Below are positions 716-60,970 of a DNA stretch of 64,000 nucleotides, piece after piece. Within the stretch, counting starts at the first letter, position 1; each line of letters begins with the position of its first letter. Both the position numbers and the translations under genes were made by a program. The notes under the pieces are model-generated. The model was not told the DNA's origin. It saw nothing but the letters and a program-made list of their open reading frames with translations, and searched no databases. This stretch comes from Obrimoposthia wandeli (Eukaryota). The stretch spans positions 310,001 to 374,000 of the forward strand of contig CDROCS010002866.1 in assembly GCA_977020255.1 (NCBI GenBank). The letters run 5' to 3'.

Positions 716-1693
716 ATGATTGCATATACAGAATTACGTATCATGAAAATATTTGATTTTAACAAGTTAAAACAAACGATTAGTGAACTCTCTCCTAGAC
801 AAAAGAATGATCTAGAAAAGCACTTGCTAAATCCCGAATCCCAACCTGAAGTACTTAAATTACTTGAAAAAGCGTTAAGTGGATGCCCTCATTGCCAGCA
901 TAATTATTCCTATAAATGGGGCACATCTAAAAGGCGTCAACGGTATCGTTGTAAGTCATGTTCAAAAACCTATAATGCGCTTACTGGTTCGCAATTGAGT
1001 GGGCTACATAAACCTGAACGGTGGGAGCAATACTGCCAAACGATGGTGGACTCAAAAACACTACGCGTTGCTGCAAAAGAGTGTCAAATTAATCTGACTA
1101 CTGCCTTCATGTGGCGTCATAAATTTCTAAAATTGGCAGATTTACTCATGAGTGAACAGCTTGAAGGCATTGTCGAAATAGATGAAACATGGTTCAAGTA
1201 TTCTGAAAAAGGCAGCCGTCATTTGACCGCCGAAAAGCCACGTAAACGTGGTAATGACAAGGCTTCTAAGGTAAAGGCTGTGATTGGTATCGATCGGAGT
1301 GGACACGTTGAAAATCAGGTTGTCGTTAGCTTTACGCTGTCTCAACTGAAAGCTGACTTTTTACCTAAGCTGGCTGAAGATCTTGTCCTCTGTACAGATG
1401 GTCATATCAATTATGAATACCTAGCGAAACAGGAAAAAATCAATCACGTGGTATTAAATCAAAGCCTTGGTGAGCGCGTAAAAGACAAAGTTTTTCATAT
1501 TCAAATCGTCAATGCATATCATATGAGATTAAAGCGATGGTTGACGCGTTTTTATGGCGTTGCAACGAAAAATTTGCAGAAATATATAGGGTGGTTTCGT
1601 TGGTTTGAGCTTAATAAACAGGTCGAAATATCGTCAGCAAGCTTCATGAAGGATATGTTGTGCACTGCGTTTCAACAAACTTCCCGAACATAG
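716..1693 (+). CDS. IS1595-family (ISPna2-like) transposase; true start may be ATG at 743
   Basis: CPHC...CKSC zinc finger, VEIDETWF, CTDG, HIQIVNAYH (DDN-type triad). Stop codon lies in a right-end sequence GAACATAGC shared with the element at 3330-4349. No matching left IR found. Confidence 0.9.
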   Translation: MIAYTELRIMKIFDFNKLKQTISELSPRQKNDLEKHLLNPESQPEVLKLLEKALSGCPHCQHNYSYKWGTSKRRQRYRCKSCSKTYNALTGSQLSGLHKPERWEQYCQTMVDSKTLRVAAKECQINLTTAFMWRHKFLKLADLLMSEQLEGIVEIDETWFKYSEKGSRHLTAEKPRKRGNDKASKVKAVIGIDRSGHVENQVVVSFTLSQLKADFLPKLAEDLVLCTDGHINYEYLAKQEKINHVVLNQSLGERVKDKVFHIQIVNAYHMRLKRWLTRFYGVATKNLQKYIGWFRWFELNKQVEISSASFMKDMLCTAFQQTSRT

Positions 1694-1837
1694 CTTTTAT
1701 AGAGATGTTTAATCTAATAGTCTGTCTTCTAACGTTTTCTCTTCTTTAGGCTTTTCCATGCGGTTGCTTTAGCGACTCTTTCTGATTGCAAAACCGCTTT
1801 CTTACAGATTTAAAAGACTGCGATATCTAAAGGATAT

Positions 1838-30225: not shown

Positions 30226-30376
30226 CATTAGTGTCCGGTTTAATTTCTGTTGTTCTTTAACTCATTGATTTTACTTTAACAACAAATGTTATTTAGCTTA
30301 AAAAACCAATTACCTATGCTAGAAAACCACAAATCAATGAGCTAGAGAGCCTACACTTATTAACCCCACAGCAATG
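30226..30376 (+). mobile_element. MITE family A copy 1 (151 bp, CATT...AATG)
   Basis: Ends CATTAGTGTCCGGTTTAA / TTAACCCCACAGCAATG; similar along its length to 54513-54656; 9-bp flanks ATAGCAGAG / ATAGCAAAT (7/9). Confidence 0.8.
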
Positions 30377-30441
30377 ATAGCAAATTAGGGTCTCATCACG
30401 AACTATCCGCTGCCGTTAGATCCGTTACGATAGGAGCTATG

Positions 30442-39190: not shown

Positions 39191-39512
39191 TTTTTATAAA
39201 AAAGAAGACAGCTTAGAAAAAGATAAATAAGCTTTATCGTTAAGTATTTGTTGCCATAAACAACGCATAAATTTAAATAAAGCATTCAGAAATAGATACT
39301 TAGCAGCTAAAAATGATGCTTATGATAAAAGTGAAGGAAGTAGAATTAGAAAAAAGACGAATGAGTTTCACTAGTAAAAGAGTATTAACTAAGCGTCAGA
39401 AAAATGTAGTCAAGGGCAAGAATATCGAGAATGTTTAGAGGCTTAATATCTTTTAAGCGTGTGAAGTATTTGAAAAACCAGCGATAACAGGTACCGCTGG
39501 TTATAAAGTGCT

Positions 39513-54512: not shown

Positions 54513-54656
54513 CATTAGTGTCCGGTTTAATTTTTGTTGCTGTATAACTCATTAATTTTACGTTAACGATAAGTGTTAGTTGGCTCGAATTAACGATGCT
54601 AGAAAACTACAAATCAATGAGTTATAGAGCTTACATTTTTTAACCGGACAGCAATG
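54513..54656 (+). mobile_element. MITE family A copy 2 (144 bp)
   Basis: CATTAGTGTCCGGTTTAA...TTAACCGGACAGCAATG; 9-bp flanks ACCTATTCT / ACCTATTTA (7/9). Confidence 0.85.
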
Positions 54657-54665
54657 ACCTATTTA

Positions 54666-55172
54666 CTAAATAAAGAAACTATTGATGAAAGCTGATAAAT
54701 ATAAGCCTAAGCCAAATACTGTATGAGCCATTAAACTTCGGATGCGTGCTACATTTGGTTTCGGGGTCTTTGCTGCGGCAATACCAAATCCAAAACTTGG
54801 CTGCATAACAAAATAAGGAAAAATAACGGTCAATATACCGAAGATAATAGAAGGGGTAATGGTTGGTTCAATTAACCAACTATTACCCGTAATTACAATT
54901 ATTATAGCTGCAAATATGACACCTATGGCATAATGCGCAAACCAACCGATTACTGATTCCATGTTAACGGGCTGAGTTAACAGAATATTTTTATGGCGAT
55001 AAATCCCTTTCGATATATATATAAGCCAGCGACCGACTAGCGCATAATTAAGTGGCACAATCGAAAAAAAACGTTGCTGAAATAATGCCAAAAAATCCAT
55101 AAATAGAGTTGCACCTATACCGATAACCACTGCATTCATAATAATATCTGATAACAATAATTCTTCATTCAT
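54666..55172 (-). CDS. DUF2938-family membrane protein
   Basis: GIGATLFMD, LNYALVGRW, GWFAHYAIG, MQPSFGFGIAAAKTP, HTVFGLGLY. Confidence 0.85.
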   Translation of the reverse strand: MNEELLLSDIIMNAVVIGIGATLFMDFLALFQQRFFSIVPLNYALVGRWLIYISKGIYRHKNILLTQPVNMESVIGWFAHYAIGVIFAAIIIVITGNSWLIEPTITPSIIFGILTVIFPYFVMQPSFGFGIAAAKTPKPNVARIRSLMAHTVFGLGLYLSAFINSFFI

Positions 55173-55204: not shown

Positions 55205-55243
55205 CATTGCAGTCCGGTTAAAAATGTAAGCCGGACACTAATG
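55205..55243 (-). mobile_element. MITE family A mini-copy (39 bp) with perfect 9-bp target duplication
   Basis: CATTGCAGTCCGGTTAAAAATGTAAGC-CGGACACTAATG; AAGTTAATT at 55196-55204 and 55244-55252. Confidence 0.88.
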
Positions 55244-55303
55244 AAGTTAATTGGTTAATATAAACAGGCGTCGTTTAACTTGTAGTTAACTTTCACTTTG
55301 ACT

Positions 55304-55858: not shown

Positions 55859-56437
55859 TTGATGCCTGAACCTGATCCATTGAGAATCATGACATTTGTA
55901 ACACCCAAAGACCTTGGCCAGTGGCTCAAAGTGAATCACGCCGCTGAAAGTGAGCTATGGGTGAAGATATACAAGAAAAGCACAGCAATTAAGAGCGTGA
56001 CTTTGAATGATGTTGTGATCGAAGTGCTATGTTGGGGCTGGATCGATGGTGTTAAAAAGTCAATTGATGATCAAGCCTATCTGCAACGCATTACTCCCAG
56101 AAAAACGCGAAGCAACTGGTCTAAAAGGAACACAGAGCATGCTGAGCGCTTGATAAGTGAGGACAGGATGATGGAATCGGGGCTGGTGCATATTCGTGCT
56201 GCAAAAGCGGACGGACGTTGGGAAAACGCCTATGTGGTAAGTGAAATGGAAGTGCCCGCGGATTTCCTAGTTGCACTAGAAAGCAATTTGAATGCTAAAC
56301 AGTTTTTTGAAACTCTCAATAAATCGAGTCGTTATGTTATCGCGTACGGACTGATAAGTGCCAAGAAATCAGAAACCAGACTAAGGCGGTTTGAAAAATT
56401 CATGAACATGCTTGCCCACGAAGAAAAGCCTAAATAA
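55859..56437 (+). CDS. YdeI/OmpD-associated family protein
   Basis: WLKVNH...ELWVKIYKK, LCWGWIDG, ITPRK.RSNWSKRN, KKSETRLRRFEK. Confidence 0.88.
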   Translation: MMPEPDPLRIMTFVTPKDLGQWLKVNHAAESELWVKIYKKSTAIKSVTLNDVVIEVLCWGWIDGVKKSIDDQAYLQRITPRKTRSNWSKRNTEHAERLISEDRMMESGLVHIRAAKADGRWENAYVVSEMEVPADFLVALESNLNAKQFFETLNKSSRYVIAYGLISAKKSETRLRRFEKFMNMLAHEEKPK

Positions 56438-56523
56438 GTTGCTCAAATGGACACAAACAGCTGGCTGTGATCCTTTTGGCTATTATCGCCAGCCATTTTT
56501 AGCCGCTTAATAAAATGTTACGG
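56428..56523 (+). other. Degenerate attC site
   Basis: GCCTAAATAAGTTGCTCAAATGGAC...CCGCTTAATAAAATGTTACGG; TAAC box altered. Confidence 0.6.
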
Positions 56524-56553
56524 CTCGTTTATCACTTACTTAGGTATAATTTA

Positions 56554-56988
56554 ATGAAATACCAACAAGCAATGCATTCTGATCTAGATGCAATCAAAGA
56601 ATTGCTAGAGTCTTCTGGATTACCAGCAAATGACATCGAAGCTCATCTGGTAAATTTTATCGTAGCTAAAGAGTCCAATGAAGTGATAGGCGTCGGCGGC
56701 TGGGAAACATGTAACGAATTTGCACTATTACGATCATTTGCTGTGAATAAAAATCACAAATGTTTAGGAGTTGCTGAAAGAATCCTGACAATAGTTGAGG
56801 AACACGCTGTTTCTTCGGGCGTAAGAGGCTTTTATCTGCTTACTGATACCGCTGTCAATTATTTCGAGCGCTTTGGCTTCTATGTATGTAGCCGTAAGGA
56901 TGCATCTGAGTCAATTAGAAAGACTAAACAATTTAGCGAGCTGTGTCCTGACACAGCAACTATGATGTACAAGAATCTATGTGCATAA
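56554..56988 (+). CDS. GNAT acetyltransferase, ArsN2-like
   Basis: LLESSGLP, ALLRSFAV, FYLLTDTA..YFERFGF, QFSELCPDTA; start reassigned to MKYQ. Confidence 0.8.
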   Translation: MKYQQAMHSDLDAIKELLESSGLPANDIEAHLVNFIVAKESNEVIGVGGWETCNEFALLRSFAVNKNHKCLGVAERILTIVEEHAVSSGVRGFYLLTDTAVNYFERFGFYVCSRKDASESIRKTKQFSELCPDTATMMYKNLCA

Positions 56989-56995
56989 ATTTAAG

Positions 56996-57067
56996 CCATC
57001 ACAAACGCTTCAATATGGATGACCAAACCGCTACTGGCTTTATCTATTGGTCTAGCAGGCGTTAATC
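56996..57067 (+). other. Degenerate attC site
   Basis: CATCACAAACGCTTCAATATGGATGACCAA...TTGGTCTAGCAGGCGTTAATC. Confidence 0.55.
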
Positions 57068-57610
57068 TTCATATAAAAACACCCTGCTTTGTATCCAGAG
57101 CCGCTATTTTACTAGTTTTTTATGAAGGTTTCTCGCTTAAGTTTTTGTTGTTATTATAAATTTTTTATAAAAATATAGCACTGAGAAATATACCTCTCTT
57201 CAAATACATAATTCTTCCATAGAATAAGCCTACACTAATTGTCTTATTAACCTGGCATCCTTACCTTTAATGTTGTCTATTTTACTATGATTCAGTACAT
57301 ATCGAATCAAGCTTCTCAATAGCATACTCCCTGCTCCAAGATGCAAATATTGAAACTGAGTTCTGTATTAATACACTCATTAGTAATTACTTCTTAATCA
57401 CCTTATTAGTTACCTAATGAGGCACTGTCTGTATTGACTGCCAATAATACGGAAATGCAAATATTGCAGGAGCAATATATTTGTCATCAAGTTAGCTTTT
57501 CTCTGTTGATGAACTCAGAGAAACCAAGGCATACATAGAACAGGACCTTACTGCTAGCTTAGTACCTTCAAGTAATGATCGCTTATTAAGTAGGCCTCCC
57601 AATTTTTTTA

Positions 57611-57963
57611 ATATTAAAAAGGGGCATGAACTTTCACTGCGATACCCCATCTTTACGGTGGCTGCGCTCTCTAACAAAAGGTATCACATGGCTTCGTCGT
57701 CTTGGACCCAAAGCGTTTCACGTGGCCAGCTTTGCCAACTCGATTATTACCTCTAACTTCAAGCCTGCGCCTAATATGATGTTTTTATTCATCAGCTCGC
57801 CTTGCCTTAACACAGAAGGGCTAGGGGCTTCCTACGGACAGATCGCACGATCAAGCCCTTGCCATTCGCTAGTCGTTAACGTTTAATAACAGTGTGTTAA
57901 ATAAACAGTGATTTTCCCACAGAGGACTTTCACCTCATTAATTCATGCCCATGCTGGGCGTAC
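57611..57963 (-). mobile_element. ORF-less group IIC-like intron derivative (~353 nt) inserted antisense in an attC R'' box
   Basis: Minus strand TTGT|GTACGCCCAGCATGGGCATG...GGTGAAAGTCC...TAGCGAATGGCAAGGG...GGAAG, resembling IIC domain I; ends ...GCCCCTTTTTAATAT; removal restores TA|ACAAGGC. 3' boundary inferred. Confidence 0.65.
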
Positions 57964-57982
57964 ACAAGGCGTTAAGGGGCAT

Positions 57983-58680
57983 ATGAAACTAGTTACCAAA
58001 ATTCTAGATAATTGGGAGCCAACACATAGAAAGAGTGTTGATCTTGGAGAGTTGATATCTAGAAATAAAATGGCTCATAAATGGAAGTCAACCTATCGAG
58101 TAACAGTGCTCCGTGAGCTGGTGTTCTGGAGAGCTATGGATATCCTGAGACAAATGGTTCTTCTTGTGGAAAACAAGCATTTACTTGGTGGTCGAATACT
58201 CCTACGAAGTGCCCTTGAAACTATCAGTGTGCTTTTTTACTTAAATGTAAAAATGCAAGCTGTAATGGAAGGGAAAATTACTTTAGATGAGTTTGGTGAA
58301 CCACATCAAAACTTATGCTAGGCTCAAAAAATGACACTACAAGGTTCAAGGCAGTTAATGTTCTTACAATAATAACTAAGCATTGTGAGAGAAAGTATAG
58401 TGGCATTTCTGATATTTACGCAAATCTTTCAGAAAGTGCACACCCTAATTATGACGGGATGTGTAGTGGTTACTCATATGTCGATGAAGATGAATACACT
58501 ACGCATTTTAAAAATAGGTGGTTAGAAAAAAATAATAACAATATTGAAGATCAAGCTATTGTAATACTTCGGATATTAGAAGAAGAATACAATAACGTCT
58601 TTATTCAAGAATTTGAAAAGCTAGAGCAGTGGCTGGTTGATAACGACGAAAAGCTTGAGGCTCTGCGTGCTGCTCCTTAA
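57983..58680 (+). pseudogene. Frameshifted cassette gene, HEPN-like / DUF5677-like hypothetical protein
   Basis: Two ORFs rejoin with +1 nt at about 58300 (EFGE-TTSKLMLGSK); LRSALET and YANLSESAHPNY motifs; stop TAA lies in the attC TAAC box. Confidence 0.7.
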
Positions 58681-58789
58681 CAAGCGCAGTCAATTTGACA
58701 GTCTAAAACTGTCACCTTTTGTGTAAAAGGAACGCACAAAAACCGCCTATTTTAGCCAACAATTATTGCCTCTTATTGAGGCGTAAGAT
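58675..58789 (+). other. Degenerate, possibly chimeric attC site
   Basis: CCTTAACAAGCGCAGTCAATTTGAC...TTTTAGCCAACAATTATTGCCTCTTATTGAGGCGTAAGAT; R' GTT changed to GTA. Confidence 0.7.
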
Positions 58790-58819
58790 AACAATGCAAC
58801 TCTTGAGGCTAAGCGCAGT

Positions 58820-59287: not shown

Positions 59288-59368
59288 AAGGACCAATAAC
59301 AATTGGCTATTTGCCCTTTCGTCGCCTATTTTAGCCAACAATTATTAGCCTCTTAATCAACTTTAGAT
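59270..59368 (+). other. Degenerate attC site
   Basis: ATTGAACAAAACACTTAAAAGGACC...TTTTAGCCAACAATTATTAGCCTCTTAATCAACTTTAGAT; both core triplets altered. Confidence 0.62.
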
Positions 59369-59549: not shown

Positions 59550-59647
59550 ACCTAACAATGCACTCAAAAGTCAAATAACAGTTGGTTTTTGCTCCTTCGT
59601 CGCTTATTTTAACCAACTATTATTTGCCTCTCAGTGAGGCGTTGGCA
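59550..59647 (+). other. attC site (apparently intact core boxes)
   Basis: ACCTAAC...AATAACAGTTGG...CCAACTATTATTTGCCTCTCAGTGAGGCGTTGGCA; a decayed upstream reading frame ends ...ELQKTKT* in the TAAC box. Confidence 0.8.
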
Positions 59648-59651
59648 CTAG

Positions 59652-60229: not shown

Positions 60230-60432
60230 ATAGTATAGGAGCCTTTCGGTAATCGTGAGTGGCCTTTTTATGTACGGAACATACGGTATTAGCAGCTTCC
60301 TCCAGATCAGATTCCACGATCAATCCCTTGCCATTCGCTAGCTGTTAACGTTTAATAACAGTATGTTAAATAAAGGCTATTTCTCCTACAGAGGACTTTC
60401 AGCTGATTAGTTCTTGCCCATGCTGGGTGTAC
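60230..60432 (-). mobile_element. Second, shorter ORF-less group IIC-like intron derivative (~203 nt) inserted antisense in an attC site
   Basis: Minus strand TTGT|GTACACCCAGCATGGGCAAG...TGAAAGTCC...AACAGCTAGCGAATGGCAAGGGATTGATCGTGGAATCTGA...GGAAG; ends CCGAAAGGCTCCTATACTAT|T; first ~130 nt closely match the 57611-57963 element. Confidence 0.68.
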
Positions 60433-60505
60433 ACAAGCGCCTGAAACGCGATGTATTTCCACTCTTTAGTCGTTCCAAAATACGCGTTTTACGCGAGCGT
60501 CATTT
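60433..60505 (+). other. attC body downstream of the intron-like insertion
   Basis: ACAAGCGCCTGAAACGCGATGTATTT...AAATACGCGTTTTACGCGAGC-GTCATTT hairpin; R' GTT changed to GTC. Confidence 0.68.
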
Positions 60506-60553
60506 TTTCTACATCCAAGTTAATTTTGTACATATTCCACAAGGATCAATATT

Positions 60554-60970
60554 TTGCCAGTCATCACTATCCAGCAATCCCCAGGTCGTAGTAAAGAACA
60601 GAAACAGTTACTGATTAAACGAATCACCGAGGCGTTCGAAGAAGCATATGAGCTCCCTCCTGAAGCGGCAATGTATAGTGCATCAAAGCATGGCTTGGAG
60701 GGGCTTACTCATTCAGTTGCACTGGAAGCCATAAAAGATGGCATTAGGATTAATTCTGTTGCGCCAGGCGTAACTTGGACACCACGTTGGGAAGAGCAGC
60801 AAGCATCAAATAACCCAAATATACGTAGCGAAGTAGAATCTGCGGTACCCATGGGCCGGTTTGCTGAAGCCATAGAAGTGGTGAATGCGATTGACTGGTT
60901 GAGTTCAGAAAAAGCTAGTTATGTTGTGGGCCACACACTCGTTGTTGATGGTGGTTTATCCTTGGCTTAA
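60554..60970 (+). pseudogene. Chimeric ORF: 4-oxalocrotonate tautomerase N-terminus fused to an SDR C-terminus
   Basis: (M)PVITIQQSPGRSKEQKQLLIKRITEAF joined to MYSASKHG...IRINSVAPG...SYVVGHTLVVDGG; SDR NAD-binding half absent. Confidence 0.8.

What the first reader, a model, noticed from the sequence alone, without database searches (positions are those of the whole stretch)
57611..57963. ORF-less group IIC-like intron derivative precisely inserted antisense into an attC core box
Seen: on the minus strand the element starts right after TTGT with GTACGCCCAGCATGGGC, contains GGTGAAAGTCC and TAGC...GCAAGGG...GGAAG blocks, ends in AT, and its removal restores TA|ACAAGG, the TAAC of an attC site. 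Established: group IIC-attC introns target the attC bottom strand at TTGT|T, and IIC introns start GUGYGCCCGGCAUGGG; they normally carry an RT/maturase ORF. Inference: this ~350-nt copy keeps most of domain I and a 3' end but no ORF, so it may be a non-autonomous mini-intron mobilised in trans. I could not fold a convincing domain V by eye (candidate CGC plus AAAG-loop hairpin near 57633-57670 pairs imperfectly).
Basis: partly seen in the sequence, partly recalled or inferred. Interest (0 to 1): 0.75.

Follow-up and report, generated by a model that had tools for sequence, protein, structure and literature searches.

The report
Decayed group IIC-attC intron 5' remnant
This is the broken front part of a mobile self-splicing intron left in a bacterial gene-cassette array, not a working mini-intron; its one feature that could still function is an outward-facing promoter already described for this intron lineage.

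Summary
The 5' end is real. At 57963 (minus strand) a group IIC-attC intron begins right after TTGT, antisense to the cassette genes.

Closer relatives found in Oceanospirillaceae-like genomes (L104, L105) align with the window from 57963 on through 57484 and again over 57435-57390. So the 'AT' terminus and the 'restored TAAC' are chance readings inside domain II.

The element is a remnant of about 584 nt, 57380-57963(-). It holds domain I, domain II and the start of domain III, with a 49-nt insertion. It has no reverse transcriptase/maturase ORF and no domain V or VI, so it cannot splice or move.

Seven other copies in the same assembly stop at different points. Four separate 3'-only fragments also exist.

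The published P1out promoter of IIC-attC introns (TTGCCA-N17-TTTAAT at intron positions 77-105, antisense) is intact at 57859-57887(+). It points into the next ORF (ATG 57983), and all eight copies keep it. Whether it is active here is untested.

The finding is an ordinary member of a known kind and of low interest.

The parts
57380..57963 (-). 3'-truncated remnant of a group IIC-attC intron: domain I, domain II and the first part of the D3 region. The 3' limit is approximate, within about 10 nt, because homology fades.
   Evidence: blastn against L104: positions 1497-1934 match window 57967-57484 at 77% (E 2e-107), and 1934-1979 match 57435-57390 at 85%. Alignments A2 and A3. L104 is a 1759-nt intron with RVT_1 and GIIM ORF fragments and a ...GGCTACCCGAT 3' end.
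57623..57854 (-). Distal domain I (kappa-zeta region and the EBS1 hairpin, down to the closing strands).
   Evidence: Rfam RF02001 group-II-D1D4-3 covers all 170 model positions at 18.6 bits, E 0.35. The same model scores 132 bits on the full-length intron L009 and 74/69 bits on L104/L105.
57436..57484 (-). Insertion of about 49 nt inside domain II relative to L104, L105, the full-length intron L009 and L111.
   Evidence: Gap in all other rows of alignment A3. The blastn match breaks at L104 position 1934.
57859..57887 (+). P1out-type outward promoter: -35 TTGCCA (57859-57864), 17-nt spacer, -10 TTTAAT (57882-57887). This equals intron positions 105-77 on the antisense strand.
   Evidence: Exact pattern match. 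Only 2 sites occur in the window against 0.04 expected. The hexamers, spacing and position are those published for P1out of S.ma.I2 and Sh.ba.I2 (PMC3001079, Table 3). The hexamers are invariant at 11 of 12 positions in 8 copies.
57964..57977 (-). 5' exon junction and vestigial attC. The bottom strand reads CTTAAC-GCC-TTGT|; the + strand reads AC AAGGC GTTAAGG.
   Evidence: Related copies have a full attC bottom strand, YTAACGCC...N40-90...TTGT|, upstream of the intron. Here only the two ends are present. An L115-type site with the stretch between its two AACGCC repeats removed gives exactly this sequence (inference).
57983..58321 (+). First ORF downstream of the promoter (112 aa, weak DUF5677-like match), preceded by AAGGGG. 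It is followed by an overlapping 121-aa ORF at 58315-58680.
   Evidence: ORF list. Pfam PF18928 at E 1.9e-4, below its cut-off. No terminator-like site in 57100-58100.
60290..60432 (-). Second, shorter remnant of the same intron lineage (first ~142 nt only). It has its own P1out at 60328-60356(+) and sits at the R'' end of an attC at about 60433-60520.
   Evidence: 85-86% identity to L104 and to the first copy over positions 1-142. Pattern match. No Rfam D5/D6 hit in L003.
56990..57066 (+). attC of the preceding GNAT cassette. It marks the left edge of the ORF-less 'cassette' that holds the remnant.
   Evidence: Read directly from the sequence. Its bottom strand reads TTAACGCCTGC...GCGTTTGT, the same pattern as the 5' exons. 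GNAT ORF 56515-56988.

Best explanation
A group IIC-attC intron once retrohomed into the bottom strand of an attC site, at TTGT|T, in a cluster of gene cassettes that has no integrase nearby. The host is an Oceanospirillaceae-like gammaproteobacterium. Later a deletion removed everything 3' of early domain III: the RT/maturase ORF, domains V and VI, the 3' splice site, the 3' exon and probably part of the neighbouring cassette. The interior of the target attC was also lost.

What remains at 57380-57963(-) is catalytically dead and immobile. Its antisense strand still carries the lineage's outward promoter P1out (57859-57887, +). That promoter is positioned to start transcription near 57894 and to read through about 90 nt into the ORF at 57983.

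Shown: homology, extent, absence of the missing parts, presence of the promoter sequence. Inferred: the order of events, the attC collapse, and promoter activity in this host.
For: Extent and identity of the remnant:
- The intron 5' end is followed by 584 nt collinear with the introns L104 and L105.
- A full-length relative in the same assembly shows what is missing. L009:318-2234 is 1917 nt, with D1D4-3 at 132 bits, D1D4-1 at 57 bits, a 455-aa RVT_1+GIIM ORF (TIGR04416, 388 bits) and RF00029 at 48.5 bits.

Missing parts:
- No RF00029 hit appears in the window at the gathering score, nor at E<=10 in 56900-58400.
- tblastn with the intron-encoded protein and blastn with the 3' parts of five relatives found nothing below 57390.

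Other copies:
- The other copies have variable 3' ends, and there are separate 3'-only fragments.

Context:
- The 5' exons of about 30 copies are attC bottom strands ending in TTGT|.
- Neighbours are small + strand ORFs (three GNATs, MerR, OmdA) separated by attC-like repeats.
- There is no intI in the window.

Promoter and literature:
- P1out matches exactly and is conserved. Its activity in E. coli was shown by CAT assay and 5'-RACE (PMC3001079).
- Truncated introns in cassette arrays are documented (PMC7923331).
Against: - The Rfam score on the window copy itself is below threshold (18.6 against 32 bits), so the domain assignment rests on homology to better-scoring relatives.
- The 3' limit (57376-57390) is a fade-out, not a sharp junction, so decay in place cannot be separated from deletion.
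- Promoter activity is untested here, and no RNA run holds this sequence.
- Conservation of the hexamers could simply be inherited from recently active introns.
- The downstream ORF has only a sub-threshold family match and may itself be decaying.
Confidence: 0.85

Rival explanations
1. One reading: a discrete ~350-nt ORF-less mini-intron (57611-57963) with both termini, inserted precisely in an attC core and mobilised in trans by the reverse transcriptase of a full-length relative.
For: - The 5' end and target motif are genuine.
- A full-length RT-encoding relative exists in the assembly.
- ORF-deleted copies with both ends do exist in related genomes: L109, L111 and L107.
Against: - Intron homology continues about 230 nt past 57611.
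- There is no domain V/VI and no 3' splice site.
- The proposed domain V aligns to the 3' strand of domain I.
- No other copy shares the end, and the ends vary.
Confidence: 0.02
2. A domesticated promoter module: the 5' remnant persists because selection keeps P1out to express the downstream cassette. The stretch from 57067 to about 57977 would then act as a promoter-bearing ORF-less cassette derived from an intron.
For: - P1out is intact in both window copies and in all eight copies in the assembly. The hexamers are invariant at 11 of 12 positions against 37 of 110 columns overall (hypergeometric P 2e-5). The spacer varies in sequence but is always 17 nt.
- Every copy has an ORF reading away from the intron 5' end within 20-176 nt.
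- No terminator lies between the promoter and the ORF.
- P1out activity is published (PMC3001079). Promoter-bearing ORF-less cassettes are a known category (PMC8876359).
Against: - Seven 5' fragments against four 3'-only fragments is not a significant excess.
- The whole first ~110 nt is well conserved, not only the hexamers.
- The copies are related, so the invariance may be inherited.
- There are no expression data.
- The attC next to it is vestigial, so the unit is probably no longer a mobile cassette.
Confidence: 0.3
3. An intron split by a later insertion or rearrangement: the 3' half (ORF, domains V-VI) survives elsewhere nearby, so the copy is interrupted and not truncated.
For: - There is a 49-nt insertion inside domain II.
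- 3'-only fragments exist on other contigs: C3797, C5920, C3765 and C2105.
Against: - The whole 64-kb window has no RF00029 hit.
- The full-length intron L009 finds only the two 5' fragments in the window, plus a 31-nt chance match at 39274.
- The attC of the upstream GNAT cassette lies only about 310 nt beyond the fade-out, which leaves no room.
Confidence: 0.04

Closest known systems
Group IIC-attC introns (S.ma.I2, Sh.ba.I2, E.c.I7 and others; Quiroga, Léon, Roy, Centrón)
   Same: - The 5' sequence and domain I architecture.
- Insertion after TTGT in the attC bottom strand, antisense to the cassettes.
- P1out TTGCCA-N17-TTTAAT at intron positions 77-105, identical in hexamers, spacing and position to S.ma.I2 and Sh.ba.I2 (PMC3001079).
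- Occurrence in clusters of attC sites that lack an integrase (PMC7923331).
   Different: Only the first ~584 nt survive. There is no intron-encoded protein, no domains IV-VI and no 3' exon junction, and the target attC is reduced to its two ends.
Fragmented or truncated group II introns in cassette arrays (UHB.F1, H.ha.F1/F2; Mob DNA 2021, PMC7923331)
   Same: Dead intron pieces inside cassette arrays. That paper states that fragments are commoner than full-length copies in bacterial genomes.
   Different: Those described are 5'-truncated (3' ends kept), as incomplete reverse transcription would produce. This one is 3'-truncated (5' end kept), which needs a later deletion.
Promoter-containing ORF-less integron cassettes and outward promoters of mobile elements (review PMC8876359)
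   Same: A non-coding stretch between two attC remnants that carries a sigma-70-type promoter facing the next cassette.
   Different: The promoter here is recognisably derived from an intron. Mobility as a cassette is doubtful because the flanking attC is vestigial.
ORF-less group II introns mobilised in trans (bacterial and organellar examples reviewed in PMC4424553)
   Same: Lack of an intron-encoded protein.
   Different: Those keep all six RNA domains and both splice sites. This element lacks the catalytic domain V and the 3' splice site.

Membership tests
Group II intron, class C, attC lineage (by descent) | Conserved 5' end (GUGYG-like) followed by the IIC 5' hairpin and the GGUGAAAGUCC block | tested here: met
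   GTACGCCCAGCATGGGC...GAGGTGAAAGTCC at 57963 downward. It is 82-92% identical over the first ~110 nt to seven other copies and to the full-length intron L009.
Group II intron, class C, attC lineage (by descent) | Domain I fold recognised by a covariance model | tested here: inconclusive
   RF02001 scores 18.6 bits, E 0.35, below the gathering score of 32. The aligned relatives score 132, 74 and 69 bits, and the window is 77% identical to L104 over 486 columns.
Group II intron, class C, attC lineage (by descent) | Insertion after TTGT in the attC bottom strand, antisense to cassette genes | tested here: met
   The 5' exon ends ...CTTAACGCCTTGT|. About 30 related copies show YTAACGCC...TTGT|. 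The neighbouring ORFs are all on the + strand. The target rule is given in PMC7923331. The 3' exon side cannot be checked because it is lost.
Group II intron, class C, attC lineage (by descent) | Outward promoter P1out in domain I | tested here: met
   TTGCCA-N17-TTTAAT at intron positions 105-77, window 57859-57887(+), compared with Table 3 of PMC3001079.
Functional (splicing or mobile) group II intron | Catalytic domain V and branch-site domain VI with a 3' splice site | tested here: not met
   There is no RF00029 hit at the gathering score in the window, nor at E<=10 in 56900-58400. The full-length intron L009 scores 48.5 bits.
Functional (splicing or mobile) group II intron | Intron-encoded RT/maturase in domain IV (or supplied in trans to an otherwise complete RNA) | tested here: not met
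   There is no ORF, and tblastn with the 455-aa intron-encoded protein finds nothing in 56001-58000. The RNA is also incomplete.
   Copies in the assembly end at about 105, 111, 142, 186, 263, 290, 310 and 584 nt. None shares the 57611 end as a terminus.
Integron / CALIN cassette array (context) | Small co-oriented ORFs separated by attC sites; integron integrase adjacent (integron) or absent (CALIN) | tested here: met
   attC-like imperfect palindromes were read by eye after the ORFs at 56420-56510, 56990-57066, 58675-58795, 59295-59350 and 59555-59650; no attC model was run. No intI lies in the window. The nearest TIGR02249 hit on this contig is about 270 kb away and carries a TAG stop. This fits a CALIN.

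The most novel reading that the evidence does not exclude
In these marine gammaproteobacteria, 5' stumps of IIC-attC introns may be kept by selection as ready-made promoters. They would turn dead introns into promoter-bearing ORF-less cassettes that switch on otherwise silent cassettes far from any integron Pc promoter. The pattern that fits this is invariant -35 and -10 hexamers, a fixed 17-nt spacing with a variable spacer sequence, and a downstream ORF at every copy.
Probability: 0.3. Interest if true: 0.45.

Novelty: new member of a known kind. Interest (0 to 1): 0.2.

Why it matters
It matters little on its own. Broken group II introns are common, and both the attC targeting and the outward promoter of this lineage were described in 2008-2010.

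The useful outcome is a correction. The element is about 584 nt, not 353 nt, and it has no 3' terminus, so it gives no evidence for trans-mobilised mini-introns in integrons.

Two modest points may interest integron specialists:
- The assembly and its relatives hold many 3'-truncated copies that keep their 5' ends, all with P1out intact. This would let one test whether intron stumps serve as cassette promoters in integrase-less arrays.
- Related genomes hold genuine ORF-deleted copies with both ends, for example L109.

Tried and rejected
- Rfam at the gathering threshold over the whole window gave no hit.
- I looked for a paralogous empty site in the assembly, using the right flank with its ORF and then the left flank. 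Only self matches came back.
- The search for related loci with the downstream 112-aa ORF in genome contigs found no relative, so no intron-free version of this cassette junction was found.
- I took an 11-bp inverted repeat spanning the supposed insertion site (GGCTCCCAATT / AATTGGGAGGCC) as possible support for a precise insertion. I rejected it: its right arm lies inside intron domain II, as the L104/L105 alignment shows, and about 0.08 such repeats are expected by chance.
- I compared the stretch below 57611 with the attC bottom strand by eye. That comparison was superseded by the same alignment.
- I looked for the missing 3' half with blastn of five relatives' 3' parts, tblastn of the intron-encoded protein, and a lax Rfam scan of 56900-57560. 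Nothing was found.
- A search for RNA evidence of promoter use found no RNA run holding the stretch. Read laying was not used, because contigs cannot show transcription starts.
- The sigma-70 scan tool does not report P1out, because it requires A at position 2 of the -10 hexamer. An explicit pattern search found the promoter.

Full report
**Observation.** On the minus strand the sequence ...CCCCTTAACGCCTTGT is followed at 57963 by GTACGCCCAGCATGGGCATGAA. Rfam at gathering thresholds finds nothing in the 64-kb window. With lax thresholds the only relevant hit is group-II-D1D4-3 at 57623-57854(-), at 18.6 bits and E 0.35. No domain V/VI model (RF00029) matches even at E<=10.

**Host and context.** The window is G000:C2866:310001-374000, part of a 1.35-Gb, 6912-contig assembly.
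- The contig is bacterial. Its LepA is 84-85% identical to that of Neptuniibacter marinus and of an uncultured Oceanospirillaceae MAG.
- From about 53 to 62.5 kb the window holds small + strand ORFs: three GNAT acetyltransferases, MerR, an OmdA-domain protein, a weak DUF5677-like ORF and a tautomerase/SDR chimera.
- These ORFs are separated by attC-like imperfect palindromes.
- The flanking genes are DinB, a GcvA-like LysR regulator and SelO. There is no integron integrase in the window.
- The nearest integrase on this contig is about 270 kb away and carries a TAG stop.
- The setting is therefore a cluster of attC sites without a neighbouring integrase (CALIN), with the intron antisense to the cassettes. 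This is the published habit of group IIC-attC introns (PMC3001079 and PMC7923331).

**A full-length relative in the same assembly.** G000:C253:3663717-3665633 (L009:318-2234) is a 1917-nt intron with these features:
- D1D4-3 at 132 bits and D1D4-1 at 57 bits;
- a 455-aa ORF with RVT_1 and GIIM (TIGR04416, 388 bits);
- RF00029 at 48.5 bits, ending ...GGCTACCCGAT.

The window element matches only its first ~200 nt by BLAST and its domain I by the covariance model.

**The decisive result.** I searched 151 genomes of the Neptuniibacter family with the element. Several copies matched almost its whole length. Two of them, L104 and L105, belong to the same sub-lineage as the window copy.
- L104 is a 1759-nt intron with broken RVT_1 and GIIM ORF pieces and a ...GGCTACCCGAT|TA 3' end.
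- Aligning them with the window shows that homology does not stop at 57611. It continues through TAAAAAAATTGGGAGGCCTACTTAATAAGCGATC... to 57484, at 77% over 486 columns (E 2e-107).
- It then skips a 49-nt insertion in the window and resumes at 57435-57390 (85%).
- It fades inside the conserved GTGATTAAGCAGAAGTCAGC stretch that Rfam D1D4-1 covers (D3 region).

The 11-bp inverted repeat that I first took as support for a precise insertion has one arm inside the intron and is coincidental.

Below about 57380 there is no trace of the intron-encoded protein, domain V or domain VI. The attC of the preceding GNAT cassette lies only about 310 nt further on.

**Other copies.** The assembly contains seven further 5' copies with different 3' limits:
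- window 60290-60432, about 142 nt;
- L004, positions 1-111 plus 180-263;
- L005, positions 22-186;
- L006, positions 4-105;
- L007, about 290 nt;
- L008/L010, about 310 nt with no ORF.

It also holds four 3'-only fragments and one divergent copy.

**Target site.** About 30 copies have a 5' exon that is an attC bottom strand: YTAACGCC..., then 40-90 nt of imperfect palindrome, then ...TTGT|. This agrees with the published TTGT/T target.
- EBS1 appears to covary with IBS1 between two copies: ACAAG with CTTGT in L004, and CAAG with CTTG in L009 (read).
- The window copy has only CTTAAC-GCC-TTGT|.
- An L115-type attC (CTTAACGCC...AACGCCTTGT) with the stretch between its two AACGCC repeats removed gives exactly this string. 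I therefore infer that the attC has collapsed, but this is not shown.

**What may still work.** Léon et al. (PMC3001079) showed that IIC-attC introns carry an outward promoter, P1out. It reads TTGCCA-N17-TTTAAT at intron positions 76-104 or 77-105 on the antisense strand, and was active in E. coli by CAT assay and 5'-RACE.
- The window has exactly this at 57859-57887(+), which is intron positions 105-77, and again at 60328-60356(+). These are the only two matches in 64 kb, against 0.04 expected.
- In the eight copies of the assembly the two hexamers are invariant at 11 of 12 positions. The one change gives TCTAAT, the other published variant.
- Only 37 of 110 columns are invariant overall (P about 2e-5). 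The spacer sequence varies, but its length is always 17 nt.
- Each copy has an ORF reading away from the intron 5' end within 20-176 nt. Here that is ATG 57983, preceded by AAGGGG, with no terminator-like site between.
- This fits a promoter that drives the next cassette. But the copies are related, the whole first 110 nt is conserved, 5' fragments (7) do not significantly outnumber 3' fragments (4), and no RNA data exist. I rate promoter domestication at about 0.3.

**Comparison and novelty.** By descent this is a group IIC-attC intron. As a functional intron it fails on domains V/VI, on the intron-encoded protein and on the 3' splice site. Fragmented introns in cassette arrays are documented (PMC7923331), although the published ones are 5'-truncated while this one is 3'-truncated. 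Outward promoters from mobile elements and promoter-bearing ORF-less cassettes are also known (PMC8876359). The finding is a new member of a known kind.

**Limits.** No intron-free version of this junction was found. Read laying was not used. attC sites were judged by eye and by comparison, not with a dedicated model.

Noticed in passing
window 60290-60432 (-), with 60328-60356 (+): A second remnant of the same intron lineage. Only the first ~142 nt are homologous and there is no domain V/VI. It sits at the R'' end (TA|ACAAGCGCC...) of an attC and has its own intact P1out.
   Followed up: partly
L109 (G145:C112, reverse strand 1772..971); L111:1501-2226; L107:1501-2212: Related genomes hold ORF-deleted copies of about 710-800 nt that keep both intron ends. 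L109 keeps an intact domain V-VI (RF00029, 47.7 bits) and ends ...CCCGAT|TA. L111 and L107 have a damaged domain V. L109 is a genuine candidate for a non-autonomous IIC-attC intron.
   Followed up: partly
L103 (G137:C111) 25-354 and 901-1228: Two 5' fragments of the same sub-lineage lie 876 bp apart in another genome. The first stops at the end of domain I and the second runs on into domain II. 3'-truncated copies therefore recur in cassette arrays of this bacterial family.
   Followed up: no
window 30226-30377 and 54513-54657; also 55208-55246: A ~150-bp repeat, 85% identical between its two copies. Its ends (CATTAGTGTCCGG ... CCGGACAGCAATG) look like terminal inverted repeats, so it resembles a MITE. 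A short version lies on the other side of the ORF at 54666-55172.
   Followed up: no
window 60554-60970 (+): This ORF joins a tautomerase N-terminus (residues 2-38) to the C-terminal third of a short-chain dehydrogenase. It looks like a fused or decayed cassette.
   Followed up: no
G000 as a whole; C2866:96936-97898; C253:3527248-3528195: The assembly (1.35 Gb, 6912 contigs) has four integron integrases above the cut-off and more than 100 tyrosine-recombinase hits, so it seems to contain many bacterial genomes. The integrase on the window's own contig has an in-frame TAG. An intact one lies on the 4.7-Mb contig that carries the full-length intron.
   Followed up: no
window 57983-58321 and 58315-58680 (+): Two overlapping small ORFs lie downstream of the remnant. 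Only the first has a family match, and it is weak (DUF5677). They may be two genes or one gene with a frameshift.
   Followed up: no
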